Below, in pieces: positions 3,204 to 33,676 of a DNA stretch of 64,000 nt. A program made the position numbers and the translations under genes. Position 1 is the first letter of the stretch; each line of letters opens with the position of its first letter. The notes beneath the pieces were generated by a model. It did no database searches, was not told where the DNA came from, and saw only the letters and a program-made list of their open reading frames with translations. Source of the DNA: Mizuhopecten yessoensis (Eukaryota). Where the stretch lies: the NCBI RefSeq assembly GCF_002113885.1, contig NW_018408769.1, positions 422,832-486,831 on the forward strand, given 5' to 3'.

Positions 3204-3475
3204 AAAGGTTAAAGGTTAGTCCCCTGTGTGTGTGTTACATTCATCTTTTGTTCAGTCACATTTCAAATCTTATTCAAGTGTATGTAACACCGATTACCCA
3301 CACTAACCTTTACTATCACAAGACGATAAACTGTATCAGCTAAGGGACATGGCAGACATCACAGTGTTAGGGGAGAAATCACAGCCCGCAGCCTGATGTA
3401 CACAACCAATAAGAATCACACTATACCTTGTTTACGTAATACCAATCAAAGCAATGTAAATCATGTGCCAGTAAA
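2748..3475. repeat. Direct duplication of a 127-bp segment (2748-2874 and 3349-3475)
   Basis: atggcagacatcacagtgttagggg...catgtgccagtaaa occurs twice, apparently identical. Confidence 0.93.
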
Positions 3476-4951
3476 CTCTTTAACGTTATCGTGTACATGT
3501 ACATCACATCTATATCTTTTTATTATAATTACTTTTTATTATTATTATTTATTATAATTATATGTAGCATACCCAATTAATCCGTATTATCATTGTATAT
3601 ATAATACATGTACATCGTTTCTATAAAACCCGTATATAATTACAGATTGTAACACTTCGTTTTCAGGGTTTCAATTGTTCGAACGACAACCCTAAAAACA
3701 CTGTGTGATAAGCTGTATCATATATTTCTAGCTTATAGATTTTACAGATCTAAAAAAATTAAATAAGTATCGTATCTTCCAACCGACCTCCATGGTCACT
3801 AATATCCTCGGTCAGTGACATGTTCTGCAACGAGGAAGACCATTAAGTGTGAATCTTTGTATACATGTCTGTTTATTTTGAAAAGACTTTCCCAAATGGG
3901 AAAATGCATTCTGATATATCACACATATAAAAGACATATAGATCACAGTACACAGTGACGATAGCAATTTCTGTCATCTTCAAACAATGTGTATGATTTA
4001 TATATACATTTTGCTTTCATTCGCCTTTGATATATATTTCGAATCGTGGCTTTAACACATACAATTTCGTGCTAGTCAGCCATAAAAAAACAGAGCTCAC
4101 TGAAAAAACAATCGATGCCTTCCAAAGACCACATGAACAAAATGCAAGCTTACTTTTCCTAAAAACGCAATTGAATATTATTGTAATAATCAGATCTCGA
4201 GATGCAAATCAACTTAACATATTCTGATATGTTTAGATCGGCTCTATTCCAGATTTAAATAGCTATTAACAATTTCGATATTATATTACTCTTTTGTTAC
4301 TGCATTTTCAAGGAAATGAAAAAGAATTGAATAAATTAATAAATAATACACAAAGAGTATATGTAAAAAACAACAAAGTTTCTGTCTCCATTTATCAACC
4401 AAATAAAAGTCAGCGCTGAAATGCCCCATTCATGGTTTAACACACAAACAGAAAACGAAAACGAAGCAGGTGAAACGTATGTTTGACAGACGGAGAATGC
4501 TGCCCGGGCTTTGACAGACGGAGAATGCTTCCCGTGCTATCACACTGTCAATGGTATCCGATATCACAGGGAACTGTACCATATAGTAAATGTAAATTCT
4601 ACCAGTAATATACCAGAACTCGAACAATAAATTCGAGAAACACATATACTTTGAATTTGTGTATTCACCTGTTATTCACATAAAAAGACTGATTAGTGTC
4701 TCTCCTCGCTGCACTCAAAGTTCTACCTTAACACCAGTTCAGAGATCTGCAAATGTGAGCTAAGCAAAATTTCCCAATACTGGACTCAGAATTCATCGAT
4801 GTAGGCATTGTGACATGTTCCGTCCTAGCTTTAACGCACTCAAAAGTATCTTTACTAACTTCCATACACAACTAATTATGGACTCGTGTCCTAGAAAGGA
4901 AATAAAAGCATGGAAAATGGAAGAACACTGATAACTAACCTAATAATGGTT

Positions 4952-7348
4952 TCAAACATTTGCAGTCAAAGTATTATCCTCGTTCACCAAGCTTCTCTTT
5001 TCCATGGCGATATTGTCTGTGTCGCTGGAGCTAGTTGAAGTATAGTTGCCGCTGTCAGAGCCACGACTGGTCGATGAGATGATACTTTTTTGGGATGACA
5101 CCTTTGGTACGGTACGTCTGACATGTGTATCCGTGTAAGCTCCAACCATTCCAGGACATGAATTAACACATGGTCTACTTGACAGAGGCGCTTGACCGTC
5201 GATGTCGTCCGGCACTACCTCAATGTCGTCAGACCAGTCACAAGGATTGTTGGTCTTCACGACCGTAGCATCAGGATCAACACCTGGGAAATAAAACGCA
5301 TTCTTAAAGTTTTCATGTTAAATATTGAGTATTAAAACTCCTTATATTACATATGTATCACGTATAATGTGAATGTATATATTACACACATAACCTAAAT
5401 TGGAAGATGTTCTTCAGCAAATATTCATCACTTCTGGTGACATAACAGTGCACAAACTTCGATACCAAAATCGAGCTAATTAATCGACCAATATGGTATA
5501 TTTTAGGAGCACGCTAAATATTATTGCATGCCGAACTTTGAAATATTGGTACTATTCTGTTATTTCCCTACCCTTTGGAGTGGTCAAGCTGTCCCCGTCC
5601 AGTAGGTGAAAGTCTCCCATGTCCGAAACGTGATGCTCATCCACAGGATGTTGCTGCCGAAGATCAACCTTTGGTCGTGAATCCGCTGGGGATTCTGGTA
5701 TAGTTTCCGGCAGAATCCTGTGGTTTCCCCGTGAAGAGTCGTTCCCACCTTGTCCAGACGGTGACGGCTGGTATACACTGACTGACGAACCTTAAGATTA
5801 AAATATATTTCTATCAAAATCAAATAAAAAATAATAATTTAGTTCACAATGATAAATAAAATTGTCCCTTATATTTACATGATGCAATTTTAACTAACAA
5901 AACATTTCATTATCAATTTCGCAAGGTTCGTCAGAATGTTTTCTGACGTACATCATTGTCATATGACTGTTATGGTAAAAAAAGGTTCCTCAAAATCATA
6001 ATGGTTGAGCATCACCTTTATCTATCTCTCAGTAATCTCTATGAATCATATTAAATGTAGGTGCATAGGAAGCAGTCCAACCGCAGTAATAAGTCGTATT
6101 TAATAATTTACCAATAGGCCCCGACATAACAAGCTGTTGCGGTGGAGCTGTGGGGTTCACATGGTCAGAATTGACGTCTGTATCATCATCACGACCAGGT
6201 AGCTGCTGATATCTCTGTGATATACTGCCTTCGTCAGTGTTTTTGTCACGTGAGCGATTCCTACAGGCGATCACGTGTTTGACTATACAGAACAGTATGC
6301 AAGGGGACAACAGGGCCACGAGAATCCACACCACGTATGTCAGAGTGGTCACTTGGCCTGAAATAAGACATTTACCAAATTATCAACAACGATCCAAGGT
6401 CTTTTATTACTTAGTGCTATATGGTACTCAGTCTAGAAGCAAATATAATTGTCAATTTTACGAAACGATACATTCAAACAATGTACATTTACCTATCAAT
6501 GTGCTCAACAATTCCTCAGAAGGACCTTCAGTCTTCGGAATTTCTTCTTCCCCTTTCAACTCTACAATAATGGAAAAATGATGTTGTAACACGAATGAAA
6601 AGTGAACAAAATCCTTATTCAGTACACCATTTAATGCATATTCAGTTTGTTGAATCGTCAACCATCACCATTCCAGTGTATCCTTTGGACTATTTTATTT
6701 CAATGCAGACCGTAAACCTTGCTGACGAAAATGATATTATTTACAAAGAAAATGAATTAAACGAATTTCTATTAAAAATTCCCATGTTACAAGGTACCAA
6801 GAGAGGTAACTCCGTTATCTTTTAATGAAACATATTAATATAGACGGAAAAACACAAGACTATTTTTAGAAGAGAACAACATAATACTTAGTTGCCGCTA
6901 AGGTTTATCTTTGTCGTTGTTGTACACTGTAAAATAAATTGTCCATATGTGCAGACACTATGATATATTTTGTCCTTACGCGCTGACAATGCGCGCTATA
7001 TGTTGTATTTTTGTATATATACGTGATAACTATTATTTTGTCCCTGCGTGTTGACGCTGATAATGTATTCCTGTGTGTCGTCACTGTACTATATATCTTT
7101 ATTTCTATATAAGGTTACTCACCTTTGCATCGTTGTCCACATTGTGAGGATACGTTGAGCTCGTTACAAACATCTAAGGTACACACGTCACAGCGTTGTT
7201 TACCAATATTACAAAAATCACGAGGAAAGACGCAGATGTCGTGTCCACAATTAAATTTAAAACCTTCAGGTGGGGACGTAGTTTCCGCCAATAGTAATCC
7301 TTGTAGAAGTAAACCAAAACACACAAGGCATCTGGTGACGGGATCCAT
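4952..7348 (-). CDS. Grindelwald-like TNF-receptor-family type I membrane protein, paralog A (5 coding exons, ~363 aa)
   Basis: Exons 7348-7123, 6561-6493, 6357-6112, 5790-5572 and 5283-4952. All introns are GT-AG and phase 1; total 1092 nt, open. Signal peptide MDPVTRCLVCFGLLLQGLLLA. 8-Cys domain CGHDICVFPRDFCNIGKQRCDVCTLDVCNELNVSSQCGQRC. TM segment YVVWILVALLSPCILFCIV followed by basic residues. Disordered tail with no death domain. Family call rests on cysteine spacing recalled for Drosophila Grindelwald. Confidence 0.8.
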
Positions 7349-7435
7349 ATCGAGAAACACAACTGACACCGTTTGTATAAAATGACTAATGTTCCAATTC
7401 ACCTGTTCAAACGAACTTATTTTTATACCATTGTC

Positions 7436-7522
7436 TATTTATAAATGGGAATTTCCGTTTTCCATACCTAGTGGAAATACCCATTTACAGGAAATTTTCA
7501 ATATATCACGCTATATCACGTG
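7436..7522 (-). promoter_or_regulatory. Promoter of receptor A: TATA box, three kappaB-like sites and an E-box
   Basis: TATAAATA on the minus strand at 7436-7443, ~90 bp upstream of the ATG. GGGAATTTCC at 7447-7456 (exact NF-kB consensus), GGAAATACCC at 7473-7482, GGAAATTTTC at 7490-7499, CACGTG at 7517-7522. Confidence 0.7.
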
Positions 7523-9216
7523 ATCATAACGGTAGTTGTGGTTGTTAATATAAATGTTATTCTATTAGTACTAGACTCCATATTTACCTTAATTTACGGC
7601 AGTGATACAAGCGTCTCACTCTAAAGGAACTGTACATCAATTATATACATTTACGAAATCAAATGACATCTTACATAAGCAAAATTCTTCTTTAATGATA
7701 TCTTTGTGGTCAGGAAAAAAGGAAAAGTTATCATTGTTTCAGTATATAGCTGGAAGTATACGATCATTAAGTCCACACTTACCAGGTGACTAACTTATAG
7801 AGTGCTGATGATAACGGTCCTTCATTCAGAATATAATGTACCCATTATAAGTAAATACTATCATATCTTGTTTTGAACAAATATATTAGATCATTTCTGC
7901 ATCATTTGTTTCCAAACGTATCGTTTACGAACATGTGTTTTATATATCAAAGAATGCAATAAAGTGTCTTGTTGAAATAAAATTTAAAAATTACTTGTAG
8001 ATTTATAAAATGTGCGATTACGTTTTGTTCGGTAAATAAACATATTTCTTCATACTAGCGTACTGTTAGTGTGTTGTTATAGTGACGGAAACAGTAGCTC
8101 GTTTTCCTATTTATATTTTATTTATGGGGTCGCCAAACTAAACCTCTTATCTTCATTTTCCCATCAGATATACTGACTTATGACCTATCATCGTAATTTG
8201 CAGAACATTTATCAGCAACGTGCATTCATCCAGATTTAAGGTAGAATAATTAAATATTTCGGTAATTTATGTCATCAGAACGTTTGTAAAGAGTCTTTGA
8301 ATCCCCCTAAATATAGGTCCTCAGATGAGGCAATCTTACTTGTCTGACAATATTAATCCATACACACGTATAGATTATAAATGCAGTTATCCTGTGTTTA
8401 TCGAATACTTATTTGGCTACAATGTTGTCTTTTTGTCTGCCATTTACAAAGCTAAAATTTCACGCAATCATTCTTTCAAGCTGGATTTTGTTTTTTAAGA
8501 ATTACTTGTGTAGCTTTAGAATATGTTTATTACGTTTAAAACCATGCATGAATAATGCTTTAAGTTCATCTTGTTTTCTTGTTTTTACATTAATGATCTT
8601 ATAGTCAGTATTAAATAGGGTACATGAACGCCAGTTTTTAATTTTCTCACGTTGTTCTTGTTTTATAGAATAATGACGCATATGTATACTACAATGCATC
8701 ACCTCTGTATGTGCGTTTTTTTTCAAGTACTAATATTTTTATAGAACGCTGAATATATACTATCTGCACCAGGTGATTGTATCAATACATTTAGTTTTTA
8801 TATCACCATATTTTATTTGTCAATTTTTTTTTTCAAACCAATAAAGTAATAATTTAACCACTGCTGCATACCATTTTACTCCTGACCTTATTTTAGCTGC
8901 TGTTATCTTTTGTTAATAATAGCATTATGGTTTTTTTCAATATATCCAGACTCACCGTTATTTTGAAACTGTTAAGTTTGGATCACTTTTTTCATGGTTT
9001 TTATTTACATTTAATGTTGCACTTAAGTTTGAATGTTATTTCCGTTATATTTCACATTTTTTTGATAGAGCTTAATTTGTATTTACGTGTTTATCATGCA
9101 AGGACAAATTCTTGTGACCACTTTTTACAATTTATTGCTATCTATTACATGTATATTTTCTTCGATTTCCAATAACTGTAGGGTGTTGAATTAAAAAAAG
9201 AGGAACCATAGTCACA

Positions 9217-9222
9217 TTTATT
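9217..9222 (-). terminator. Candidate polyadenylation signal (AATAAA) for receptor B
   Basis: tttatt on the plus strand ~1.4 kb past the stop codon, followed on the minus strand by a T/GT-rich tract. Other AATAAA sites exist. Confidence 0.35.
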
Positions 9223-10648
9223 CATAAAATTAATACAGAGCGTATGCAACCACCGCCTATGGATCTGTTCTTTATCAATATTTTGAGATTAACATGCACG
9301 CATACTTAAATGAAACAAATTGCGGGGGACTTTGATAGAGTCATTATTCAGTGTATAACGCCATACTGCAGCCTTAACATTACATTGTTGTAATAGCATT
9401 CGCCTTAAAATGACCAGAAGTCTTGAAAATCGTTAGCAATAATCAACACTATTCGTGTTTTTTTTAAAATTTTTGTACGTCTAAATACAAATGAAACGAC
9501 AAGCAGTCTTCACAATATTGAACTATGTGTTTGTATGGTTTAGTCAAATATGAACTATGGATCCAAATACACATGTTTATTTTCCCATCTTTGATCTATT
9601 TATTCATCAGTCTTTATCTGGGATGAACTCTTACGCCATCTTTTCGTGCTAAGAAACTCCAGTGTTCACTTTCAGTGTTACAGTAATTGCACTAAGATCG
9701 TAAATGGCACAACTGTATTTGAAGATTTATGGGCTAAAGTTAACTTTGGTTACCATCTAAAGATGTATTTTTATTATAATTTGATTTCGCTCCTTTCAGG
9801 TAGGGATGTGATTTAACATAAACATTAACGTAAGAATTTACTACATGTGTGTATGTTACATATGAAAAATAGGAACTGATTCTGGTAGCTGTTGTTATTA
9901 AAGATGTTTTTGTTATAACTTTTTATGTTTCGAAGCTCTCTCGAAACTTTAACAACTGGTGATAGTCAGGATCAGTGTGTAAGCTATATGGTTGATGCAT
10001 GTGCCTCTACTTCAGTATACCGTGTAACGTATTTAATCTAAAAGTATATCGCCACAACCGGTAAAACTTGGACATTTGATAAAATGTGTAAATGTAGTAG
10101 AAAACACGAAATCGTGTTGTGAATTCTTAAATTTATTTCAAAATAAAACTTCAAAAGCAAACAGAGAAAATGCAAACCTGAAAATAAATAACGTCTACGG
10201 AAAACCAAACGTTTTACACTGCAATACAGTTAACACGTTTTACCATCATATATATTTACATGCATATGAATCAGGAATAATGATTCTTAATTTACAGCAG
10301 AAAGTCCTTATACCCTTCTGCATGCTTATAATAATTTCCAGAATGGTAGGCGGTTGGAATAGTTTGAAATCATTCTGAGTAATACATAACAATATCATGA
10401 CCTAAAACAATTTTCAATAACACCCTGATGGCTTCCAGTGTATCGATTGTGAGGAATAAATTAAAGTGTTTTTAAAACTAAATAAATACGAATTGTATAT
10501 GTAACTCTCCCGACAAGAAGTGGGTTTATTTTTATCCTCGTTCTAGAGTTTCACATCACCATCGTTGACATTAGCTTAATTCACGTCTTTATAATGATAC
10601 TGGCCATATTTACTACAATAATCAATCTATAAAGTATAACAACTCGGC

Positions 10649-13600
10649 TCATGATTCTACTTCCTGTTGTCTATTAACTGCTGGTTGCTGCATGATATTG
10701 TTCTTCAGATCAACGCTTCCGTTAGGGCTAGAGTTGCCGGTTCCGTAGTGACCACTGTCTGGAGTTGAGATTCCACTTGTGGTGCCACTTCTTTCAGAAG
10801 ACAGACTGATAGACGACTCGGCTGGAGGGGCTGTAGGTGTGACGTTATTTAATACCGTGGTTGATCGCGGTCTATGTTGTACTTGAGTCTCGATATCTCT
10901 CGGAAGGGATACTTGATCCTCCTTCTCAAAGACATTCTTTGTCATCGTTTCTTCGTCATTGGTAGAATGACGTCTGCTACTGGGGACGTTAGCATTCACT
11001 TTAAAAGGAAACAGAAAATACAGACGTATGATATATGTTTGCAGAATATAAAGAAAGTTAAAGCATTAAAAGGCAATAGCTTGTCCTAAAACTTACAGTT
11101 GTATTGCAGATAAAAATCAAGTTAATAATTCTAATTTATTAAAAGGTTGCCATTGCTTTTTGGCACAAAACGGATACTAAAGATGACTGCTTACATATCA
11201 GTTTCATATTATGCTTGTCAAGGAGGGTGCAGTCTGCAAGATTGGTCGACATGTGTTCGTCTATAGGATGGCTGATGACTGGTACTACCGCCTGGTTTGA
11301 GGGCCAATTGGTTGATTCCTCCATGTGTCTACCCAGACCATTACTACCGTCGTCCATAAGTTTGGATGAAAATTGACACTCTGTATTACCGGATCGCTCT
11401 GATGGTTGGCATTGTTCTCCTTCTGTAATGACACAGTGATAGTAACGTAGATAATTGTAAAATGCATAAAGAACGAGTTACACATCTGATATTGGGATCT
11501 AACTGTCACACATCTTATACTGTTTCTATATTATGTGCTCATTGCATGGTGTCAGAAAATAAAGCGTTATGTCGTTGTTTATATTTTTTTTGTTTTGTTT
11601 TTCGAAATTATATTTTTTTTTATATAGAATTAAACTTGATTCACAATATGCATATCCGTTCAATTATTGTAAGCATTTAAAATGGCCTCACCTGCTAGTG
11701 CTGGTTGCTTGTTTCCACGTGGAGGCAACAATGGGACTTTTTCTGCCAGACAGTTATCAACGACATGTGTTTCTCCCATCGTCTTCTGAACAACACTTGC
11801 TCCTGCAGGCTCTACAGTTATTCCGTTAGAAACGTCAGTCTCCTCGTCATCAAAACGTGTCATTTGCTGCGGTCCTGCTTTCAGTTGTCTCATTGTCCCC
11901 TGTCTGTCTTTGATACTTTGTTTTCGGTTATCTCTGCGTATCTTTATTAGTAGGACAATGATGAATATTAGCATGGCCATCATTATAGACACTAGGATGT
12001 AGATGATTGTCCATTGTCTTTTATTTTCCTCTGAAATGTAGTAAATACATTAATGACAACGGAGCTCTGAATAATATATAAAAAAAATAGATACGATTTG
12101 GAAGCGGTTCAAATTACAAGGTGATATGTAACATGTTCTAAATCAACTTCTCTCGCCGTTTTGTGATACATACCTAGTGACAATATAAGTCTGTCTTTCT
12201 CTTCTTCTTGGACAGCAAGCAGTCCCTCTGGAAGTTTTCAACAAATTTAATATAATTGTTTCAATTTTCATTCAATATATGATCGTGAGTCAGTTTCATT
12301 CAACATGATGTATCACAACGCGGTACTTTATATTATTGTTATAACCTACCTTTCGCTGCCTGGTTAGCACCGATACCATCAGATCCTCCATTCTCAAGTG
12401 CTGTAACGACAAAGGTGAAGGCCAAACTTTTATTGTACTCACGCAAGTGTCAAAATGTACAATGTATAACATATGATAAGATATCATTGTGTAGCTATTA
12501 CAAAATAATATATCGTCTTGGACTAACACAGGGTCACACGTCATAATGAGACCTTTACAATATACTGTACCGTACCTAACAACTGGGTTACACAAAGTAA
12601 CATACCATTTAGAGAACCTTACAATATACAAAATGTACCGTATTAGACCACTGGGCAGCATAGGGCAACATGTCTATCGGATCATTACAGTTTACCATTT
12701 GGATCTCCGGGAAAACATGGAGTAGTTTTTCATTGTGTCTATATCACATTAATGTGTACCATATCTGACAACTGGGCAACACAGGGTAACAAGTTATTGT
12801 CTGATTATTACTGCATACTGTATAATACATACTGAACTACTGGACACAAGACAATAAAATACGTCATTTACTTAACATTAGCATATACCGTATTGGAACA
12901 CCTGGCAACATAGGGCAACAAGTCAATGTGTGATTACAATATACCGTATTTGAACACCTGGCAACATATTGGAACACGTCAATGTGTGATTACAATATAC
13001 CGTATTGGAACATCTGGCAACATATGGCATCACGTAAATGTGTGATTACAATATACCGTATTTGTACACCTGACAACATAGGACAACACCTCAATGTGTT
13101 ATTACAATATACTGTACTTGAACACCAAGCAACGTAGGGTAACACGTCAATGTGTGATTACAATATACCATACTGGAACACCTGGCAACATGTCAATGTG
13201 TGATAACAATATACCATACTGGAACACCTGGCAACGTAGGGCAACACGTCAATGTGTGATTACAATATACCATACTGGAAAAAATGGCAACATGTAAATG
13301 TGTGATTACAATATACCATACTGGAACACCTGACAACAAAGGGCAACACGTCAATATATGATTACAGTATACCGTATTGGAACACCTGGCAACATAGGGC
13401 AACACGTCAATGTGTGATTACAATATACCGTAATGGAACACCTGGCAACATAGGGAAACACGTCAATGTGTGATTACAATATACCGTATTGGAACACCTG
13501 GCAACAAAGGGCAACACGTCAATATATGTTTACAGTATACCGTATTGGAACACCTGGCAACAAAGGGCAACACGTCAATGTGTGATTACAATATACCGTA

Positions 13601-16321
13601 TTGGAACATCTGGCAACATAGGGCAACACGTCAATTTGTTATTACAATATACTGTACTTGAACACCTGCCAACGTTGGGCAACACGTCAATGTGTGATTA
13701 CAATATACCATACTGGAAAACCTGGCAACATGTCAATGTGTGATACATGTAACAATATACCATAATGGCACACCTGGCAACGTAGGGCAACACGTCAATG
13801 TGTGATTACAATATACCATACTGGAACACCTGGCAACACGTCAATGTGTGATTATAATATACCGTATTGGTGGAACACCTGGCAACATAGGGCAACACGT
13901 CAATGTGTGATTACAAAATACCATTCTGGAACACCTGGCAACATGTCAATATGTGATTACAATATACCGTGTTGGAACACCTGGCAACATAGGGAAACGC
14001 GTCAATTTGTGATCACAATATACCGTGTTGGAACACCTGTCAACATAGGGCAACACGTCAATGTGTGATTACAAAATACCATACTGGAACACCTGGCAAC
14101 ATGTCAATGTGTGATTACAATATATCGTGTTGGAACACCTAGCAACATAGGGCAACACGTCAATGTGTGATTACAATATACCATATTGGAACATCTGGCA
14201 ACAAATGGCATCACGTAAATGTGTGATTACAATATACCGTATTGGTACACCTGGCAACATGTCAATATGTGATTACAATATACCGTGTTGGAACACCTGG
14301 CAACATAGGGCAACACGTCAATGTGCGATTACTATATACCGTGTTGGAACACCTGGCAACATAGGGCAACACGTCAATGTGTGATTACAAAATACCATAC
14401 TGGAACACCTGGCAACATAGGGCAACACATCAATGTGTGATTACAATATACCGTATTGGAACACCTGACAACAAAGAGCAACACGTCAATGTGTGATTAC
14501 AATATACCGTATTGGAACACCTGACAACAAAGAGCAACACGTCAATGTGTGATTACAATATACCATACTGGAACACCTGGCAACAGTCAATGTGTGATTA
14601 CAATATACCGTATTGGAACACCTGGCAACAAAGAGCAACACGTCAATGTGTGATTACAATATACCGTATTGGAACATCTGGCAACATATGGCATCACGTA
14701 AATGTGTGATTACAATATACCGTATTGGTACACCTGGCAACATGTCAATATGTGATTACAATATACCGTGTTGGAACACCTGGCAACATAGGGAAACGTG
14801 TCAATTTGTGATCACAATATACCGTGTTGGAACACCTGGCAACATAGGGCAACACGTCAATGTGTGATTACAAAATACCATACTGGAACACCTGGCAACA
14901 TAGGGAAACGCGTCAATGTGTGATTACAATATACCATACTGGAACACCTGGCAACAGTCAATGTGTGATTACAATATACCGTATTGGAACACCTGGCAAC
15001 ATAGGGCAACACATCAATGTGTGATTACAATATACCGTATTGGAACACCTGGCAACAAAGGGCAGCACATCAATGTGTGATTACAATATACCGTATTGGA
15101 ACACTTGGCAACAAAGGGCAGCACATCAATGTGTGATTAATATATTATCTGACACATGGGTCACGTAGGGTAAAATGTCACTTTATACATATTACAATGT
15201 ATATAATTGTAACATGTGGTTGCAGGACAGTTTGTGTAATGCATTATAGCGTATAAAACAGTATGTATAACAAATATAAAAGCGCCCTGTTACAATCATT
15301 GCGACAGGTCTAAAAATAAAGATTCATTCGTGCCGCATTGCAGTTTCGCTAAAATTAGCGACGTAAATTTTCAGAATATAAAGTTGGATCTGACTCAATA
15401 TACTCATGTAATACTATCTCCATTACACCATATATACGTGGTCAGATTGCATCATACATTAAACGTGACCCGATCGATACCAAATAACGCCACTATATTG
15501 TACACGTGTGATCACATTTACATTCCTTACAGAATATCGTGTAAGTCCTGACCAGGACAACATACAACAAATATATATGTAGAATAATACAAATTTTAAT
15601 AATTTAGAAAGCTCACAGGCTTAACAACACATAATTAAAAAAGAAAACATCTGTTTTAACTGTAGTAAAACGGTTTCTACTTTTCATTATACATATTTTC
15701 ACTACATGTAGTAATGCGTGTATCTGACAGGTGTATTGCTTTATATCTCGTGTATAAACAATGTATTGATAATAAGTTATTGTAAAAGTAGACATATGAA
15801 TATATAGAGTAAAGAGATAACAATGATGTTACAACATAACTTTTGAATAGATACATGATACACTCTTGTGTGATATATATTGTCCTGAAAAGAACTTTTC
15901 CTTAAAATGAGAGATTAGATAGACATTATTTGAAATACACGCGTTTATGAATATTTAAACAGTTGTGATTTGTTTTCTTATGAATTGAATGTTTGAACAG
16001 ATCAAAATTAAAAATAATAAATTCCTTACCATTAAAAAACTAGTTTCTTTTCGGATGAAGACATTTGTTAGGTAATGTAAACTTACCTTTACACTGACTG
16101 TAGCACTGGGACGGAGTGTCTAACGAGTAACACTCGTCTTGAGTACAGGCCTGACACGAGGGACGCTGACCCTTTATCACCCGACAGTATTCAGCTGGAA
16201 ACTCGCAAAAGTCAAGTCCACAGTTGAACCAAAAACCATCAGGGGGTAATTCCAAAGCGGAAGAAGACAGGAAATTATAACAGCAGAGAAGAGCGACGGG
16301 AATGACCACGAATCTAGCCAT
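10649..16321 (-). CDS. Grindelwald-like TNF-receptor-family type I membrane protein, paralog B (6 coding exons, ~418 aa)
   Basis: Exons 16321-16087, 12400-12350, 12227-12174, 12030-11692, 11422-11195 and 10998-10649. All introns are GT-AG and phase 1; total 1257 nt, open. Signal peptide MARFVVIPVALLCCYNFLSSSA. 8-Cys domain CGLDFCEFPAEYCRVIKGQRPSCQACTQDECYSLDTPSQCYSQC, homologous to paralog A (PPxGFxFNCGxDxCxFP). TM segment WTIIYILVSIMMAMLIFIIVLLI followed by KIRR. Confidence 0.8.
12880..15140. repeat. Minisatellite of ~53-bp (and ~42-bp) units in intron 1 of receptor B
   Basis: Unit caatataccgtattggaacacctggcaacatagggcaacacgtcaatgtgtgatta, with degenerate copies extending to ~12500. ORFs at 13094-14867 are repeat translations. 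Confidence 0.96.
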
Positions 16322-16376
16322 TTTAATTGTATGAACTGTATTGCACGGATCTATTCTTAGTGTAGATAAATTCCAG

Positions 16377-16445
16377 TTTATAAATAGCCACAAGGAGTGT
16401 TAAACTATTTGTGTTCAAAGTTGTGACGCAGATGACTCACACGTG
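16377..16445 (-). promoter_or_regulatory. Candidate promoter of receptor B: TATA-like element, CRE-like site, AP-1 site and E-box
   Basis: tttataaata at ~16377-16386, TGACGCA at 16424-16430, TGACTCA at 16433-16439, CACGTG at 16440-16445; all within 125 bp of the ATG. Confidence 0.5.
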
Positions 16446-17736
16446 ATGTGTACTGGGTGTTGTGCAATCTATTCTGCATACTTAAACCTTTAGATCGAGA
16501 CAGGTCGATATGAAAATAAGGAATGGCATGAAATTCAGTGTAACACGATATTGCTGACAAGAATTATTCTCATTTTAGTATGTCCTATTTATCAAGAAGT
16601 TAGGGAGAGATTTATAAGAAAAGGAATAAATGAAAAAGGCAGGCAGAATTATAGCTTTTACCGCTTAAATAGATTTAGTAAATATGTATACAATGCTACC
16701 AATTTTAGCATGCGCAGTGTCCCACAAACCATGTTGATGTCATGTATGAGATGTTATGCTCGAATGAACTGTAAAACTCCACGACGAAATTAAATAAAGA
16801 ATGTATGTGTGTGTATTGCGAGAATGTGAAAAGGAATGTTAAAGAATACAAAATAGTTAAAATAAAGGATGATGAAGTATACATATCTCTATCTCGATAG
16901 GTTGTACTCCACAGAGACCAAAATGGCATTAATGCAGGGGGATATATAACATATATAATATTTGAGATGTTTTTATCGGAGTCTTAGCTCTGATATATAT
17001 TAAGCGTACCATATGATAAACAACATGGTCACTAAAGGGGTATGTCTGATAATTGAATAAAATGAGCATTAACATAGACAAGTGCATATTGCCCATACGT
17101 AAATAACAAACGCTTGTCGAGTCAATAATCATTTGCTGTATATGTTAGCTAATATAGAATAGTAATATCTCTGGAACATACCTGGTAAAACGTTTAAAGA
17201 ATAATTGATTTAATATTGGTGTTTGATTTTATTCTGAAATTAAGAATAAGAACACAGTATGAATGAATTTAATGATTCTCATTTATTGATGACAGATAAA
17301 AATAATCTGTTCTTGTTATTATAGATTTCGATTGTGGAATATTAGGGTTTCCGCTGCTCCTAAGAGTTTAAAGTAATAATTCTGTTAAAGAAAGGCTTTA
17401 TACCTTGTGCATTAAAGAAACAATTTGGCACATATTTAAATATGATGTATACATTGACAAGAGTTTACCATCCTGTCTTCTACTGGTTTATGGTGTTTCA
17501 AGTTCTATCGTAAATTAACCAACATATTGAGATGAACTTCTTCGAGGTATAGATATGATACATGTACGCACTGGTTCCTCCTGAACAGGAACAATACAAT
17601 GCCATTCGATTACAGAACAATTGTCTTCTTGTCTGGTCTAACATAATTATCAAATGAACTATACTCTATGAGTATTCATTCCAACCATTGAAAACCCGAA
17701 TATTTTAAATTTAGCATAGAAAATATGTGATATGAT

Positions 17737-23598: not shown

Positions 23599-26500
23599 TT
23601 ATATAAAATGAAATATAAGAAATACACTTATCAGCAGCTGTACAGTGGTTGAACTTTCTGTGGAGGATGCCGACCCTCTCTCAGAATTACACAAAGAGTT
23701 TGAGCAACACGAGAAACACTGTATCCTCTCATAGCTGTCCTTGATACGGCGACAGTCCGGACGGCAGTCTTCCTGACATCTACGACCATATGTGACGTCA
23801 CCGGTTACTGTTTCGTTCTTTATTACCTAAAACAGCAAAGGAATTACATTTTCAAACCAAGATTCAATAGTTTATGTATTTTTTCTATTATAATTTTATT
23901 AAAATATATTATTGAAAATCAGTTGATTTGATATCCATGTAAAATCCAAACGTTCCAAAGGATTCATAACAAACTCAGAAATCATACCTGATAAAAAAGG
24001 ACAACTATTATTACTGAGGAGTTATGAACGTCAAAACGCCACAGAATGAAACCTCCATATATTACTTGATTTATAACAATTAAACAGGTATTAAGTAGGA
24101 GCCAGTTCAACGATGTTGCTATTTTAAGAGTCATATATTTGCAACGCAATCTACTGTAATGTTCTGAAATCTGCTGACAAATCGCCTGTATTCCTTCTAC
24201 TTGATACCTCGTGCAACGTCACATATCCACACGTCATCGTCTAAAGGTAAAGTTTTATCAAACAAATTTGCACCTAAGTTTGATGTACATGTACTATTAG
24301 AGCACGTAGACATGGAACGCATAAACTTTCATTCCATTTGGTTTTGTCATGTACCAACAAGTGTACGTGAACCACTTATTTATGCCTAGTGTCAATTTAA
24401 CTGTCACTGACACGAACAAATGTGAATAACATGACAGTTTGAAATATTTGTTTCATTGAAATAATGCTTTAGATAACAGCTAAAACAGGGATACGAACAT
24501 GAAAATGGACCTTCACCTTTTCATGTTTTTTATTTCACTTAAAATCACTAACATGCAAACCAATTTATGTATAATTAGCAAATATATAATCCACTCATCG
24601 CTAGCTTCAAATTTGTATACGTGAAATTCTAACTCCAAGTGGAATTTCATTTCAACTAGGCTTCACAACATTTGTTTTTTTGTTTGTTTAAAAACGCAAT
24701 GTTTATTAACAGGAACTGGGTTAGTATAGATTTATTCGCGGTTTCAGTTGACAAATATGTTATGAAAATTGAAGATTTATTCTGAAAATAGTGCGCTACA
24801 ACTCACCAAGAAAACTTTGATCGCCCCTGAATGTGTTTTTTATTAAAAAAATGCTAAATAAATGTTCATGTCAATATTTTACACTCTTCAGTAAATGTAA
24901 TATAAACACCACTTTTACTAGTCAAATATTAAAACTTAACGATTAAGAATTTTCTTTAAAATAAAAATAATATCGTATGTTATACACAAACGATTTTACC
25001 CTACTAACATCGTCTGTTTTAGGTCCAGGTTTCTAGCCTAAGGTTAAAACACATGTTTAATAACTTAAACTCTGTTAAAATTGATTATAATCCTTTCAGC
25101 AACATTTTTATCAACAATTGGGGACAAAAAGAAACGCGCTGGTACACCACACTACCTGTGTAAGTTGGCGGATCGGTTATAAATGCCCTTTGGCCATGGC
25201 ATTAACAGGTAACACTTTCTGGGTAATAACTTTGGTCTCTATTAGTTCACCTGTTAATTCTCAGGTAAGTATCGTAAATGCCCTTTGGCTATGGTATTAT
25301 ATGATACAGTAAGACCTACAAGTAATTATCATTTCTTTTAATTCATAGGTAGGATATTCGGGTGTGTAAACTGTGTATTACTGTCTTTCAACTTTAAGTT
25401 ACATTGAATGTAGTTGATGCAGGCACATAATTAGATTTCCGTAATTAAGGCGATTAACTACCATACAACATATATTGGTAGATGACAATATTATGCAGAT
25501 AATAATAAGAGCGTGTCAGAATGGTTACATGTAATGAAAAGAGTATCGGATAAATTAGGTCACTATGACGTCACACATCACATGATCTTGTACCAAGTTC
25601 AAAAGATGTAGCATCACCTGGTCTGTCCATCACATGAGTACCGAGATAGAAGGGGTCTCGGTGACTACACGTATTATTGCATCGCAGGACCGTAAAATAT
25701 GAAATTATGAAAAATCGTGGCCAAAATCCTTTAAGTCTGAGTAGATTATTTATCCATATTGGAAAAATACACAATCTCAAGGAAGTTAACGTGAGTGTGA
25801 CGTTATTGCAGATGCTGAGCATCAAATGTCTAAAAGGCAGTCATAATGATTCTATCTACTCTAAATACATACATTTACTAAACAGTCTAGATTATTTCGA
25901 AAGAGAAAAAACAGCTTAACCTGAAATTCAAGTATTGTAGAGAGGGAAAAATATCATTAAAGTAAGATAAAAAAAATCACAGCTTCGACACCGAAGCATG
26001 AAATCTAAACTGGAACTCAATTATAAGTAACGGGGGCCGCATCAGTTGATTTTAGATCGGAAGTGCTCCCTACGCAACATGTGATTCTCGCGAGTTTGTT
26101 CTTTGTCAAATCCAGTATGGTATATGTCAGCCGCAAGCGATGTAAGACAAGAAACTGCAACTATGTTTGCAATCATGACCGGCAGTACACTTGCTTTGTT
26201 GGAAGTTGAAATAGAATCAACAAAGTACTACATCAACAACATCCGAAGTCAATACAGAAGACAACAACAGGAGCTGTAAAGGTGATACTTATGCAAAGTG
26301 CTGTTAAATTCAAGAAAGTATGTAGGTCGCCAAACTTCTACGACATAATGAACGATACTGGAAGATGGAATAAAGGTCATGATCAAGATTGATAGTTTTA
26401 CAACATATAGTACAAAAGCCTTTTAGGTAGAACACGTTGGACGAATATTGTGATTATGAACAGAACGCATAAATCTAGAACGTCCAGATATTTATGGTAA

Positions 26501-26981
26501 CTTTCGGTACTGTAAAAGGAACCACACTGAGACAAGGAAAGATTACTAACAGTGGATTTGCTACGTTTGTCACACATGTTTGTTGTGAGGTAAACATTTT
26601 TATTATAATGTAGGTAAAAGTCATCGAGTAATGTAAAGGGGTAACTTCGCTTCTTCACGGACATAGACCTTCTTGGGAAACCAGCACCTCACAATATTAC
26701 TCGGACTTATACTTTAACTGTAGAACATTTATCGAAACCAACAATATCGCCACCGCGGATATAATGTCACGTACCAGGAACTCCACTCTCAAAACAGTAT
26801 TTGATACTCACTGCACAGAACGCCTGGTCCAGTCGACAGATCGTGGTGGTCACTCCCGTTAGGTCGTACATGTCACGGCAGTGATCGGTCTGGTTACATG
26901 TCCAACATCGCAAGAGTTCGGCACTTACAGCGGGGTCGATTGTCAGCTCGGCAGATACAGTCGTGCCAATCGTCAATCCAC
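23599..26981 (-). CDS. Ly6/uPAR (three-finger) family protein C, probably GPI-anchored; last two coding exons, first exon uncertain
   Basis: Exon 26981-26812 (phase 1 to 0; ...LRCWTCNQTDHCRDMYDLTGVTTTICRLDQAFCA|gtgagt) and exon 23826-23599 (VIKNETVTGDVTYGRRCQEDCRPDCRRIKDSYERIQCFSCCSNSLCN...VQLLISVFLIFHFI*). LxCxxC start, CCxxxxCN end, hydrophobic C-terminus. A candidate signal-peptide exon lies at 36690-36636. Confidence 0.8.
26420..26700 (-). mobile_element. Degenerate Penelope-like reverse transcriptase relic
   Basis: VYLTTNMCDKR in ORF 26398-26664 resembles the GxLxTKLYDKR motif of Penelope-type RT C-termini. Heavily decayed. Confidence 0.35.
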
Positions 26982-28318: not shown

Positions 28319-28719
28319 GTGCCAAAGATATGCCTTGTGGCGTCGTTGTCATTGTTACCTTTTTAGTTTTCACTATGGCATTGCTTGAGTGTGCGTGTCG
28401 TCAATGAAACGGAGGGCACTTGCCCTTTTGGAATACATGGTCTTATTATCCATGTACCTTTCCTAGGATATCCATGTATATCTTTCCAATTTTTACCCTA
28501 GCTTCATAGAATTCGTATAACGGTTATCTATTCACACTTAAATTTCTTTTATTTTTGATTAATAATTATATTTATTTGTTTTGTCTTTTTTTCCAGCCAT
28601 GTCATCAATGATAACATGTCAATGATGACATCGACGAGTAGGCTTCCTTTTTGTCATAAGCATTAACGTCTACTCACCTTATGATGGAAATGTGTTACTA
28701 CACAACGTATTAGTATTTT

Positions 28720-31700
28720 CAGTTATTACAGACCTAGCAATGCCATTAATTACTACATGCCTAGCAATGTCATGAATAACTACAGACCAATCAATGTCAT
28801 GAATTACTACAGACCTACTAATGTCATAATTAATTACGGACAAATAATGTCATCAATTACCACAGACCTAGTAATATCAACATTCACTCCAGGCCTTCTA
28901 ATGTTATCATTTATTACGGACAAAGTCATGTCATCAATTACTTCACACCAAATAATGTCATCAATTACCACAGACCTAGTAATATCAACATTCACTCCAG
29001 GCCTTCTAATGTTATCATTTATTACGGACAAAGTCATGTCATCAATTACTACCCACCAAGTCATATCATCAATTACTACACACCAGGTAATGTCATCAAT
29101 TACTTCACACCAAGTCATGTCATCAATTACTTCACACCAAGAAATGTCATCAATTACTACATACCAATCAATGTCATGAATTACTACAGACCTAGCAATG
29201 TCATCATTTACTACAGACCAAGCAATGTCATCAATTACTACAGTCCTAGTAATATCAACATTCACTCCAGGCCTTCTAATGTTATCATTTATTACGGACA
29301 AAGTCGTGTCATCAATTACTACACACCAGGTAATGTCATCAATTACTTCAGACCTAGGAATGCCATTAATAATAACAAATTAAGGTAACTACAGACCTAG
29401 GAATGTCATGAATTACTACAGACCTACTAATGTCATAATTAATTACGGACAAATAATGTCATCAATTACTACAGACCTAGTGATATCAACATTCACTCCA
29501 GACCTACTAATGTTATCATTTATTACGGACAAAGTCATGTCATCAATTACTACACACCAAGTAATGTCATCAATTACTACACACCAAGTAATGTCATCAA
29601 TTACTTCACACCAAGTAATGTCATCAATTACTACACACCAAGTCATGTCATCAATTACTACACACCAAGTAATGTCATCAATTACTACACACCAAGTAAT
29701 ATCATCAATTACTACACACCAAGTAATTTCACCAATTAATACACATAAAGAAATGTCATCAATATCAAGGCACCTATTTATGTCATCAATTACTACCGAC
29801 CAAGTGATGTCAACAATGATTACTCACCAAGTCATTTCATCAGTTCTACAGACCAAGTAATGTCCTCAATTAATACACACCAAGTGTACAAGTTTATTGG
29901 TTTTCCTCAGATACATTAAAATGTACAACATGAGGTATCAGAGTATAATAATACACATGTGATGACAACATGGATGGCAAGTTCACAAAACAGTAATCAT
30001 GATACATATTACAGCAGTTTGTTAATTTTTTCCAACAAAAGACAAATTCCATTTAATACTGTCGTGTTACAAAACAGACCATTCATTTTAATTTTAGCAG
30101 GATATTTTCTGAGGCAGGGGGTAGGGGTACCCGTGGTAAGTGGGTCACAACAAGTTTGTTGTTGTTGTGTATTTTGAGTGGAGCTCCCAGAGTCAGAACC
30201 CTCTATAGAATTACTACTTTCCATACCTGTGGACATCGACGAGTAGGCTTCCTTTTCGTCATAAGCATTAACGTCTACTCACCTTATGATGGAAATGTGT
30301 TACTACACAACGTATTAGTATTTTCAATTATTACAGACCTAGCAATGTCATCATTTACTACAGACCAAGCAATGTCATCAATAACTATATACCTAGTAAT
30401 GTCATCAATTACTACAGACCAAGTAATGTCATTAATTAATACACATCAAGTAATGTCATCAATTGTTACACTACAAGTAATGTCATCAATTACAGGACAC
30501 CCATTAATGTCATCAATTACTGTATACCTAGTAATGTCATCAATTACTACACATCAGTTTATGCCATCAATTACTATACTCCTAGTTTGTCATCAATTAC
30601 TACACAACAAGTAATGTCATCAATTAACATATACCTAGAAATGTCAACAATTAACACATACCAAGTAATGTTATCAAGTAACACATACGAAGTAATGTCA
30701 TCAATTACTTAAGACCCAGGAATGTCTTCAATTATAACAGATTAAGTAATACCATCAATAACTACATACCAAGTAATGTCATCAGTTACTACACTACAAG
30801 TAATGTCATCAATCAATACACGTCTAGTTATGATAATAAAAACTACAGGCCTAGTTATTTCATCAATTACTACAGACCAAGTAATGTCATCAATTAATAC
30901 ATACCAATAATGCCATCAATATCAAGGCAACTAGCAATGTCATCAATTAATACACTACTGGTAATGTCATTAATTACAAGACACCCATTAATGTCATCAA
31001 TAACTATATACCTAGTAATGTCATCAATTACTACAGACCAAGTAATGTCATAAATTAATACACACCAAGTAATGTCATCAATTAATACACTACAGGTAAT
31101 GTCATCAATTACAAGACACCCATTAATGTCATCAATTACTTCACAACAAGTAATGTCATCAATTACTACACACCAAGTCATTTCATTAGTTTCTATACAC
31201 CAAGTGATGTCATCAATTAATACACACCAAGTAATGTCATCAATTAACACCTACCAAGTAATGTCATCAGTAACTACAGAAAAAATAATGTCATCAATTA
31301 CTTCAGACCTAGGAATGCCATTAATAATAACAAATTAAGTAATGCCATCAATAAATACACACCAAGTAATGTCATCAGTTGCTACACTACAAGTAATGTC
31401 ATCAATTAATACACATCTCGTAATGTCATGAATCACTACAGACCTAGTTATGATAATAATAACTACAGACCTAGTTATTTCATCAATTACTACAGACCAA
31501 GTAATGTCATCAATTAATATACACCAAGTAATGCCATCAATATCAAGGCACCTAGCAATGTCATCCGTTTCTACCGACCAAGTAATGTCAACAATAATAA
31601 CACACCTAGTAATATCACCAATTGCTTCATACCAAGTAATGTCATCAATTACTACAGACCAAGTAATGTCATCAATTACTACAGACCAAGTAATGTCATC

Positions 31701-32565
31701 AACTACAAGGTACCCATTAATGTCACTAATAACTATATTCCTATTAATATCATCAATTAATGCAAACCAAGTAATGTCATCAATAAATACACACCAAGTT
31801 ATGCCATCAATATCAAGGCACCTAGCAATGTCATCAATTACTACCGACCAAGTAATGTCATCAATTACTACACACCAAGTAATGTCATCAATTACTACAC
31901 ACCAAGAAATGTCATCAATTACTACACACCAAGCAATGTCATCAATTACTACCGACCAAGTAATGTCATCACTTAATAACACACCTATACACCCCTGATG
32001 ACGTCACAATTGAAGCAATGTCATCAATAACTTTAAACCTAGTTATGTCATCAATTATTACAGACCAAGCAGTGTCATCAATAACTATAAACCTAGCAAT
32101 GTCATCAATTACTATCGACCAAGTAATGTCATCACTTAATAACACACCTAGTAATACCATCAATTACTCCATGCCAAGCAATGTCATTAATAACTATAAA
32201 CCTAGCAATGTCATCAATTATTACAGACCAAGCAGTGTCATTAATAACTATAAACCTAGCAATGTCATCAATTATTACACACCAAGTAATGCCATCAATA
32301 TCAAGACACCTAGCAATGTCATCAATTACTACCGACCAAGTAATGTCATCACTTAATAACACACCTAGTAATACCATCAATTATTACAGACCAAGCAATG
32401 TCATTAATAGCTATAAACCTAGTAATGTCATCAATTACTGCAGACCAAGTAATGTCATTAATTAATACAGACCAGGAAATGTCATTAATTAATACAGACC
32501 AGGAAATGTCATCAATTACTACAGCGCTAGTAATGACAATAATAACAACAGAGCTAGTAATGTCA
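28720..32565. repeat. ~30-bp minisatellite (caagtaatgtcatcaattactacacac) interrupted at ~29885-30325
   Basis: Over 100 degenerate copies; explains the MSSITTHQV / VIDDITW ORFs. The left flank (~28628-28745) is duplicated at ~30232-30348. Confidence 0.95.
29885..30230 (-). mobile_element. Probable 3' fragment of a non-LTR retrotransposon inside the minisatellite
   Basis: Unique insert. The minus strand shows an ORF end (30009), a UTR-like stretch, then caataaacttg right at the junction. Confidence 0.4.
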
Positions 32566-33676
32566 TCAATTACAACAGCCATAGTTTTGTCATCAATGAT
32601 TGCACACTAACTATCGTTTTTGTGACTTATCATCTAATTATTTGTTCAGTTTTGATATTCTGTTTCCACTGCAGATAATGTTCCCACGCAATTGCTGTTT
32701 AAGAACAGAATTATCGTTGAACGAACAAAAAACCCAGACACTTTCGTTAGGTTAACTCCGGCTGCGTGAGGATGCAATATACATTTTGTAGATGACCCCC
32801 TACGGCAAACCAACGACGACATCAATAATTTATTGGCAAACGTATGTTGTAGACTTAAACCGGTGACGTGTTGGCAAAACATGTAAGATTTTAGTTTTAT
32901 ATTCTGGTGTTATTATAAAGCAATGCTTTAAAACTCTCTATACCACTGAACAGGCAGTTTGTATGATTTATTCTAAATTTTGTTTAATTCATTGTGGCCT
33001 TTTCAATAAACCTTCATAATGTTGTTTTTTGTCAATTTTGTCAATTTTATTCAATTCTCTTCTATAAAGAATTCCGAGATCTAGTGAAAGTGGAAAGGTC
33101 AGTACGGTAGGTTTGCATACATCTCCTGTCACAAATTTGTATACTTTTCATTGTTTTTCGTGTAAATTTATGCCTTATTTATTTGGCAATAATTAGGAAA
33201 TAGCTGTTTTTACACTTATATTTTATCACTGTTGTGGTGGCTCGGACAAATCCGTTCAAAAGTGACCCACGTGGTCGGGTTGGTGGTTGGTAACACACTA
33301 CCTCTTTGTGATGGGCGGGTGCGGTATCACCATCTACATGACCATTCCCGAAATGTTATACTAATTGTATCTGGTTCTAACACTACAATGTAACTAATAT
33401 TCTGATTAGCTTTTCGCTGTTGGAATGTTTTTTCTTAAATAAATAACCCCAAATCCGGTAATGTCATAATGTCTCCATACTTTAGTGTTGTTATCAATGA
33501 TGACAAATCTTGCATCAACCACTACACATTTTGGTATCGTTTCATAACTGTTACTTCAGGTTGCTTAGAATAGAAAGCATACAGAATCATTGACTTACAC
33601 CGGTAGGATGTTAATGAGTGAGGTGTTGATGATACATGTAAGTACGATATGGACATTTATATCAATGATGTATGTA

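What the first reader, a model, noticed from the sequence alone, without database searches (positions are those of the whole stretch)
4952..16321. Tandem pair of Grindelwald-like TNF receptors in a probable mollusc genome
Seen: two paralogous type I membrane genes, each with one ectodomain spaced C-x4-C-x6-C-x6/9-C-x2-C-x4-C-x8-C-x3-C, an acidic stalk, a TM helix and a ~230-280 aa disordered tail without a death domain. Established (from memory): Drosophila Grindelwald, the Eiger/TNF receptor signalling through TRAF6 and JNK, has one atypical 8-Cys domain with nearly this spacing. Inference: these are lophotrochozoan Grindelwald-type receptors that standard TNFR_c6 searches may miss and that are probably annotated as uncharacterized. 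They could represent an under-described, duplicated TNF-sensing branch in molluscs.
Basis: partly seen in the sequence, partly recalled or inferred. Interest (0 to 1): 0.85.

Follow-up and report, generated by a model that had tools for sequence, protein, structure and literature searches.

The report
Two scallop Grindelwald-type TNF receptors
Two neighbouring genes of the Yesso scallop encode real membrane receptors whose single small outer domain most resembles the fruit-fly TNF receptor Grindelwald and human BCMA/TACI; receptors of this kind were already reported for this species in a preprint, and no ligand or signalling partner has been tested.

Summary
Observation confirmed. The window is Mizuhopecten yessoensis. 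Gene A (5 exons, 363 aa) and gene B (6 exons, 418 aa) equal RefSeq XP_021373359 and XP_021373385 letter for letter; RNA contigs confirm all gene A joins plus an in-frame skip of its stalk exon. The 8-Cys domain defines a bivalve family under purifying selection. Grindelwald is the only PDB sequence hit of the family profile (E 1.6, all eight Cys aligned), and the top four structural matches of both AlphaFold models are Grindelwald, BCMA and TACI (Z 3-4.3). Each score is weak; together they are consistent. Most likely these are single-CRD, death-domain-less TNF receptors signalling through tail motifs (TRAF-like P[VI][DE][DE], PTAP, DSGxY), probably NF-kB-inducible (kB sites enriched in family promoters). 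Ligand binding is untested and Grindelwald's Eiger-contact residues are not conserved. Novelty is limited: UniRef names both 'TNFR-Cys domain-containing', and a bioRxiv preprint lists three grnd homologues in this species (accessions not checkable). New here: head-to-head ancestral arrangement with B inverted, stalk-exon skipping, kB promoters, a divergent recombining A copy, and signal-peptide-less mussel members. The scan had no earlier Grindelwald/TNFR finding on other DNA of this genome.

The parts
7123..7348 (-). Gene A exon 1 (coding): signal peptide and the whole 8-Cys domain (Cys34-Cys74), N-glycan sequon at Asn65
6493..6561 (-). Gene A exon 2: acidic stalk, 69 nt cassette exon that is skipped in frame in some transcripts
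6112..6357 (-). Gene A exon 3: transmembrane helix, juxtamembrane tail, PTAPP motif
5572..5790 (-). Gene A exon 4: tail with the QPS and HPVDEH...D..LLD block
4952..5283 (-). Gene A exon 5 (coding): distal tail with DSGNY motif, stop
7436..7500 (-). Gene A proximal promoter: TATA-like element with adjacent kB-consensus site (7447-7456) and further near-consensus sites
   Evidence: function inferred
16087..16321 (-). Gene B exon 1 (coding): signal peptide and 8-Cys domain (Cys34-Cys77) with a 3-residue longer hairpin
12883..15139 (.). 56-bp tandem repeat inside gene B intron 1 (not coding)
12350..12400 (-). Gene B exon 2: stalk
12174..12227 (-). Gene B exon 3: stalk
11692..12030 (-). Gene B exon 4: transmembrane helix and proximal tail
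11195..11422 (-). Gene B exon 5: tail with the QPS and HPIDEH...D..LLD block
10649..10998 (-). Gene B exon 6 (coding): distal tail with PTAPP and DSGHY motifs, stop

Best explanation
[quoted passage not shown] Shown: genes, splicing of A, topology, conserved ectodomain under purifying selection, a predicted fold that matches Grindelwald over its whole length. Inferred, from the Eiger-Grindelwald and APRIL-BCMA complexes: three receptors bind the grooves of a trimeric scallop TNF ligand through the second hairpin and the helix-loop-helix; clustering lets the disordered tails recruit TRAF-type adaptors at the conserved P[VI][DE][DE] block and activate JNK and/or NF-kB; PTAP and DSGxY motifs then drive ubiquitin/ESCRT-dependent endocytosis or turnover; kB sites make A an inducible feedback gene. 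A and B probably differ in ligand choice because their hairpin tips differ in length and sequence.
For: Grindelwald is the top PDB hit of A exon 1 (E 1.1) and the only hit with E<=10 of the 21-sequence family profile, with all eight Cys in register (E 1.6). AlphaFold models: pLDDT 84 and 93, strands then two helices, as described for Grindelwald (PMC8024323). Against 48,161 chains the top four hits of both models are BCMA, TACI and Grindelwald; Grindelwald in the Eiger complex aligns over 44 of 52 residues, rmsd 2.4, Z 4.2, BCMA over 37, Z 4.3; Atlas shape search ranks arthropod Grindelwald clusters 1st and 3rd, TM 0.57; language-model features give TACI/BCMA (0.75-0.86). The core aromatic equivalent to Grnd Phe46 is F/Y in all 23 family members. 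Ectodomain dN/dS 0.02-0.21 between scallop orthologues. Tail block is kept from scallops to mussels, twice in mussel tails; its core reads PIEE/PVEE in two members, like the Fn14 TRAF site PIEET (PMC3895871). kB consensus in 4 of 10 family promoters against at most 1 in 300 shuffles. The species has 27 TNF-family ligands by the preprint's count.
Against: No sequence or structure score is significant on its own (E>=0.76, Z<=4.3, feature scores <0.9); small disulfide-rich domains can converge. Foldseek did not list Grindelwald for model B. Grnd residues that contact Eiger (Tyr48, Thr51, Glu52, His66, Asn67) are not conserved and the C6-C7 loop is 3 residues shorter. No canonical TRAF6 motif in A or B; in this species the block reads PVDE/PIDE, not the TRAF2 consensus, and it is lost in two A orthologues. 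The block regex was designed after seeing the sequences. Four promoters lack kB sites. Disulfide pairing was not read out.
Confidence: 0.72

Rival explanations
1. They are true TNFR-superfamily CRD proteins but act mainly without TNF signalling: as decoys or sinks that bind and internalise ligand, or as trafficking regulators of other receptors, in the way Drosophila Wengen regulates an FGF receptor.
For: No canonical TRAF site in this species; the best-kept tail motifs (PTAP, DSGxY) are sorting/degradation-type; kB-driven promoters fit negative feedback; Eiger-contact residues are not conserved; Wengen precedent (PMC10514202, title and abstract).
Against: Long tails with a block conserved between scallops and mussels, and a PIEE/PVEE core in some members, suggest adaptor binding; pure decoys usually lack such tails (own knowledge).
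Confidence: 0.16
2. The domain is a bivalve-specific Cys-rich module that only converges on the TNFR CRD and binds a non-TNF ligand.
For: All cross-phylum scores are weak; the exhaustive profile search reached only bivalves; a nuclear-receptor zinc finger scored better than Grindelwald against the 2-sequence profile, which shows how noisy Cys matches are.
Against: The zinc-finger hit covers 25 residues and vanishes with the 21-sequence profile. Independent searches return only single-CRD TNFRs among tens of thousands of chains, including the one named beforehand; architecture matches too.
Confidence: 0.1
3. The genes are mispredicted or non-functional remnants.
For: Two raw-read runs gave no reads (no test, since the organism was not shown in them); gene B joins not tested with reads.
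Against: Intact frames, RNA-contig joins for A, identical RefSeq models, orthologues in three further scallop genera, purifying selection.
Confidence: 0.02

Closest known systems
Drosophila Grindelwald (PDB 6zsy, 6zt0)
   Same: Type I, one 8-Cys CRD with spacing x4,x6,x6,x2,x3,x11,x3 against x4,x6,x6/9,x2,x4,x8,x3; Pro after Cys2 and aromatic before Cys3; hairpin plus two helices; no death domain; an N-glycan sequon in the C6-C7 loop in A
   Different: Eiger-contact residues not conserved; shorter C6-C7 loop; strongly conserved N-terminal PxxGFxFN segment; longer tails with their own motifs; two or three copies; orthology not shown
Human BCMA, TACI CRD2, BAFF-R, Fn14
   Same: Single small ligand-binding CRD, same hairpin/helix core (rmsd 1.7-2.5 over 35-37 residues), death-domain-less tails; PIEE-like core as in Fn14; mussel members lack a signal peptide as BCMA/TACI/BAFF-R do
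   Different: BCMA and TACI CRD2 have six Cys and match only the C-terminal 35-39 residues; the DxL hairpin motif is absent in A and B; A and B have signal peptides
'grnd' homologues of bioRxiv 10.1101/2024.07.27.603686
   Same: Single CRD with CXXCXXXC-type signature; 3 listed for M. yessoensis, 1 for C. virginica, 14 annelid, 6 brachiopod
   Different: Accessions are not in the held text, so identity with A and B is likely but unverified; the preprint does not describe gene order, splicing, promoters or tail motifs
Classical multi-CRD bivalve TNFRs (e.g. the two Yesso scallop TNFRs of Xing et al. 2016, PMID 26988286, seen only as a reference title) and Wengen
   Same: Same superfamily by inference
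   Different: A and B have one atypical CRD that Pfam TNFR_c6 does not detect and no death domain; the paper itself could not be read

Membership tests
TNF receptor superfamily | Single-pass membrane protein with extracellular N-terminal Cys-rich domain | tested here: met
TNF receptor superfamily | CRD fold | tested here: met
   Top structural hits are all TNFR CRDs, though Z is only 3-4.3
TNF receptor superfamily | Match to Pfam TNFR_c6 or BCMA/TACI/BAFF-R models | tested here: not met
   No Pfam hit for 21 family members; Grindelwald itself also fails TNFR_c6 according to the preprint, so this does not exclude membership
TNF receptor superfamily | Binds a trimeric TNF-family ligand | not testable with these tools
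   No complex prediction or binding assay available
Grindelwald type | One CRD with eight Cys in X2-C2 register | tested here: met
   All eight Cys align with 6zsy; spacing constant in 23 members
Grindelwald type | Disulfide connectivity as in Grnd | not tested
   The structure tool returns no coordinates or bond list
Grindelwald type | Core aromatic (Grnd Phe46) | tested here: met
   F45 in A, Y45 in B, F/Y in all members
Grindelwald type | Eiger-contact residues Tyr48, Thr51, Glu52, His66, Asn67 | tested here: not met
   lowers the claim of functional equivalence, expected if ligand and receptor co-evolved
Grindelwald type | No death domain; tail binds TRAF6 homologue and Veli | tested here: inconclusive
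   No death domain; no canonical TRAF6 motif, only a TRAF2/Fn14-like core; binding untested
Grindelwald type | Orthology to arthropod grnd (significant profile link or tree) | tested here: inconclusive
   E 1.6; no arthropod sequences reached, so no tree with Grnd was built
BCMA/TACI/BAFF-R group | DxL hairpin motif, six or fewer Cys, no signal peptide | tested here: not met
   A hairpin NIGKQR, B RVIKGQRPS, eight Cys, signal peptides
EGF, EB, WAP, LU domains | Sequence or fold match | tested here: not met
   No Pfam hit; none in the wide structure searches; one EGF cluster at Atlas rank 7, below Grindelwald

The most novel reading that the evidence does not exclude
These genes represent a bivalve-wide, NF-kB-inducible branch of single-CRD TNF receptors that descends, with arthropod Grindelwald and vertebrate BCMA/TACI/Fn14, from one early bilaterian receptor. 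It signals through an undescribed TRAF-binding block, is tuned by stalk-exon skipping and by loss of the signal peptide in mussels, and in the Yesso scallop gene A carries a strongly diverged, recombining haplotype whose divergence rises toward the ligand-binding end, as expected under balancing selection.
Probability: 0.25. Interest if true: 0.55.

Novelty: new member of a known kind. Interest (0 to 1): 0.32.

Why it matters
Bivalves have 20-27 TNF ligands but few recognised receptors, because Pfam-based surveys miss this domain. Defining the family gives candidate receptors for those ligands in farmed shellfish and a test between two published views: Grindelwald as arthropod-specific (10.1101/2021.12.26.474206) or as widespread in invertebrates (10.1101/2024.07.27.603686). 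This result sides with the second. It is a useful annotation with testable details, not a new kind of system.

Tried and rejected
Pfam on exons, ectodomains and tails: nothing relevant (Gag_p6 hits are only the PTAP word). Word-based homologue search with exon 1: no candidates, a length/word limit and not evidence of absence. Nuclear-receptor zinc-finger hits: partial, disappear with the deeper profile, and incompatible with a secreted domain. P0006 (beetle peritrophin-like mucin): false positive, left out of alignments and tree. A weak third ectodomain-like hit at 45586-45738: full of stops, rejected. Metagenome and viral contig scans: no relatives. No inverted repeats of 30 nt or more flank gene B. 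Positive selection between A and its copy A': dN/dS 1.4 but not different from neutral (Fisher p 0.5); the exon 2 value is unreliable because of an indel. Raw-read runs X21 and X22 laid no reads. No paper names the accessions; the Xing 2016 paper is not held; no paper found for a DSGNYS degron, so that resemblance rests on my own knowledge.
Full report
Observation. Reading 4000-17500 and building models locally gives two minus-strand genes. Gene A has coding exons 7348-7123, 6561-6493, 6357-6112, 5790-5572 and 5283-4952 (363 aa). Gene B has 16321-16087, 12400-12350, 12227-12174, 12030-11692, 11422-11195 and 10998-10649 (418 aa). All introns are GT-AG and phase 1. The 8-Cys pattern occurs twice in the window and never in 100 shuffles. 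The window holds no N.

Identity. An exhaustive profile search with the two ectodomains returned a 418-aa protein identical to model B: XP_021373385 / A0A210PWL0, Mizuhopecten yessoensis LOC110463262. Model A is identical to XP_021373359 / A0A210PWN1, LOC110463250. NCBI calls both uncharacterized; UniRef calls both 'TNFR-Cys domain-containing protein'. RNA-type contigs from two studies join all five exons of A, and one also joins exon 1 directly to exon 3 (depth 67.5 against 36.3 for exon 2 to exon 3), which shortens the stalk from about 31 to 8 residues in frame. Contig depth is a poor measure of isoform level.

Family. Relatives come from scallops, an ark clam, mussels, Solemya and unnamed assemblies; all named ones are bivalves. 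Eight Cys and a Pro are invariant. A tree of 24 ectodomains groups the scallop A and B rows together (96/93) apart from other bivalves, with A and B each on one side of a branch (one search failed). The tree is short, midpoint-rooted and flags long branches; P0006, fragments and near-duplicates were left out. It suggests a duplication in the scallop lineage. Ectodomain dN/dS between orthologues is 0.02-0.21 where dS is estimable.

Relation to TNF receptors. A exon 1 finds Grindelwald as top PDB hit (E 1.1). The 21-sequence profile finds it as the only hit up to E 10, with all eight Cys paired (E 1.6). AlphaFold models of A and B are confident. In the widest structure search both return BCMA, TACI and Grindelwald as the top four of 48,161 chains. 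Grindelwald is the only one that covers nearly the whole domain (44 of 52 residues, rmsd 2.4, Z 4.2); BCMA ties on Z over a shorter core. The Atlas shape search ranks Grindelwald clusters first and third and shows a separate mollusc cluster with TACI/BCMA Pfam hits. None of these scores is significant alone, and Foldseek missed Grindelwald for model B. The argument is the agreement of different methods on a target named in advance. The core aromatic that Grindelwald needs for folding and binding (Phe46, PMC8024323) is kept in every member, but the Eiger-contact residues are not.

Likely working. Inferred from the solved complexes: a TNF trimer clusters three receptors and the disordered tails signal through short motifs. 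There is no death domain. A block with core P[VI][DE][DE] followed by D-x-x-L-L is shared by A and B, recurs in mussels (twice per tail) and reads PIEE or PVEE in two members, like the Fn14 TRAF site PIEET. It is lost in two A orthologues and no canonical TRAF6 site exists, so TRAF binding is a hypothesis. PTAP(P) and DSG[NH]Y are conserved among scallop orthologues; from my own knowledge these resemble ESCRT-I and beta-TrCP motifs, pointing to regulated internalisation. A has it; B of this species has an AP-1-like site instead. NF-kB induction is inferred, not shown.

Gene order. In Pecten maximus and Ylistrum balloti A and B lie head-to-head, 0.8-1.6 kb apart, and in Ylistrum the LU gene and 27/54-bp repeat follow B as in this window. 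So B alone is inverted here, by a real inversion or an assembly error. In Argopecten the orthologues are about 17 Mb apart on one chromosome. A 3.6-kb scaffold of this species carries an A-like copy lacking exon 1, whose divergence from A rises from 2-3% at the 3' end to 10-13% in exons 3 and 2; RNA contigs carry its letters at four positions on an A background. That fits a recombining divergent allele or a converting paralogue; selection is not shown.

Prior work. bioRxiv 10.1101/2024.07.27.603686 built a grnd HMM because Pfam misses Grindelwald and lists 115 invertebrate homologues, three in M. yessoensis. The accessions are not in the held text, so I could not confirm that A and B are among them, but it is likely. 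An older preprint called Grindelwald arthropod-specific. No held paper names these loci.

Handling notes. Searches used exons by reference or protein ids that tools returned. My own joined models were used only inside scripts to check frame and compare with fetched proteins; the step of searching a joined, typed model was left out. No contig taken for human was met.

Verdict. Real, conserved genes, with A shown to be spliced and expressed; most probably Grindelwald-type single-CRD TNF receptors (about 0.7 for the signalling-receptor reading, about 0.9 for superfamily membership). New members of a known kind, probably already counted in a preprint; interest 0.32.

Noticed in passing
window 6493-6561: Stalk exon of gene A is skipped in frame in RNA contigs; one Mytilus gene model (P0050) also lacks its stalk exon.
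   Followed up: partly
window 10649-16400 vs L002 and L003: Gene B is inverted relative to the head-to-head A/B pair of Pecten maximus and Ylistrum balloti; real inversion or misassembly not resolved.
   Followed up: partly
L006 1-3584 vs window 3323-6584: A-like copy (LOC110445041) with divergence rising toward the 5' end and an unrelated intron 1 beyond about 25 nt; RNA contigs look recombinant between the two.
   Followed up: partly
L009-L011 and L005 upstream of the start codon: Mussel-type family members start directly at the Cys domain with an in-frame stop just upstream, so they seem to lack a signal peptide, like type III BCMA/TACI/BAFF-R.
   Followed up: partly
window 7436-7500; L001, L003, L005 promoters: kB-consensus sites near the TATA region recur in family promoters across scallops, ark clam and mussel.
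   Followed up: yes
window 23602-23826, 26770-26970, 44503-44730, 45049-45255 (minus): Exons of two three-finger/LU (Quiver-like) genes with signal-like and GPI-like ends; the first is syntenic in Ylistrum.
   Followed up: partly
window 51971-63541 (minus): Gene with a Tyr-rich 274-codon ORF and a weak FH2 hit (E 0.2); noted by another reader as a divergent formin.
   Followed up: no
window 28719-32597 vs L002 21361-23473: The 27/54-bp tandem repeat with long open frames on both strands is conserved at about 70% in Ylistrum at the same position; it may be coding (mucin-like) rather than a neutral satellite.
   Followed up: no
L008 17176-17268: Frameshifted fragment nearly identical to the Argopecten A ectodomain exon just downstream of Argopecten B, a trace of an older A/B linkage or a partial duplication.
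   Followed up: partly
L001 16252-20558: Partial second copy of the family gene next to the Tegillarca gene, interrupted by a DUF4371 transposon-like ORF.
   Followed up: no
window 7400-7500: One RNA contig runs upstream through the putative TATA/kB region, so the transcription start of A is not fixed.
   Followed up: no
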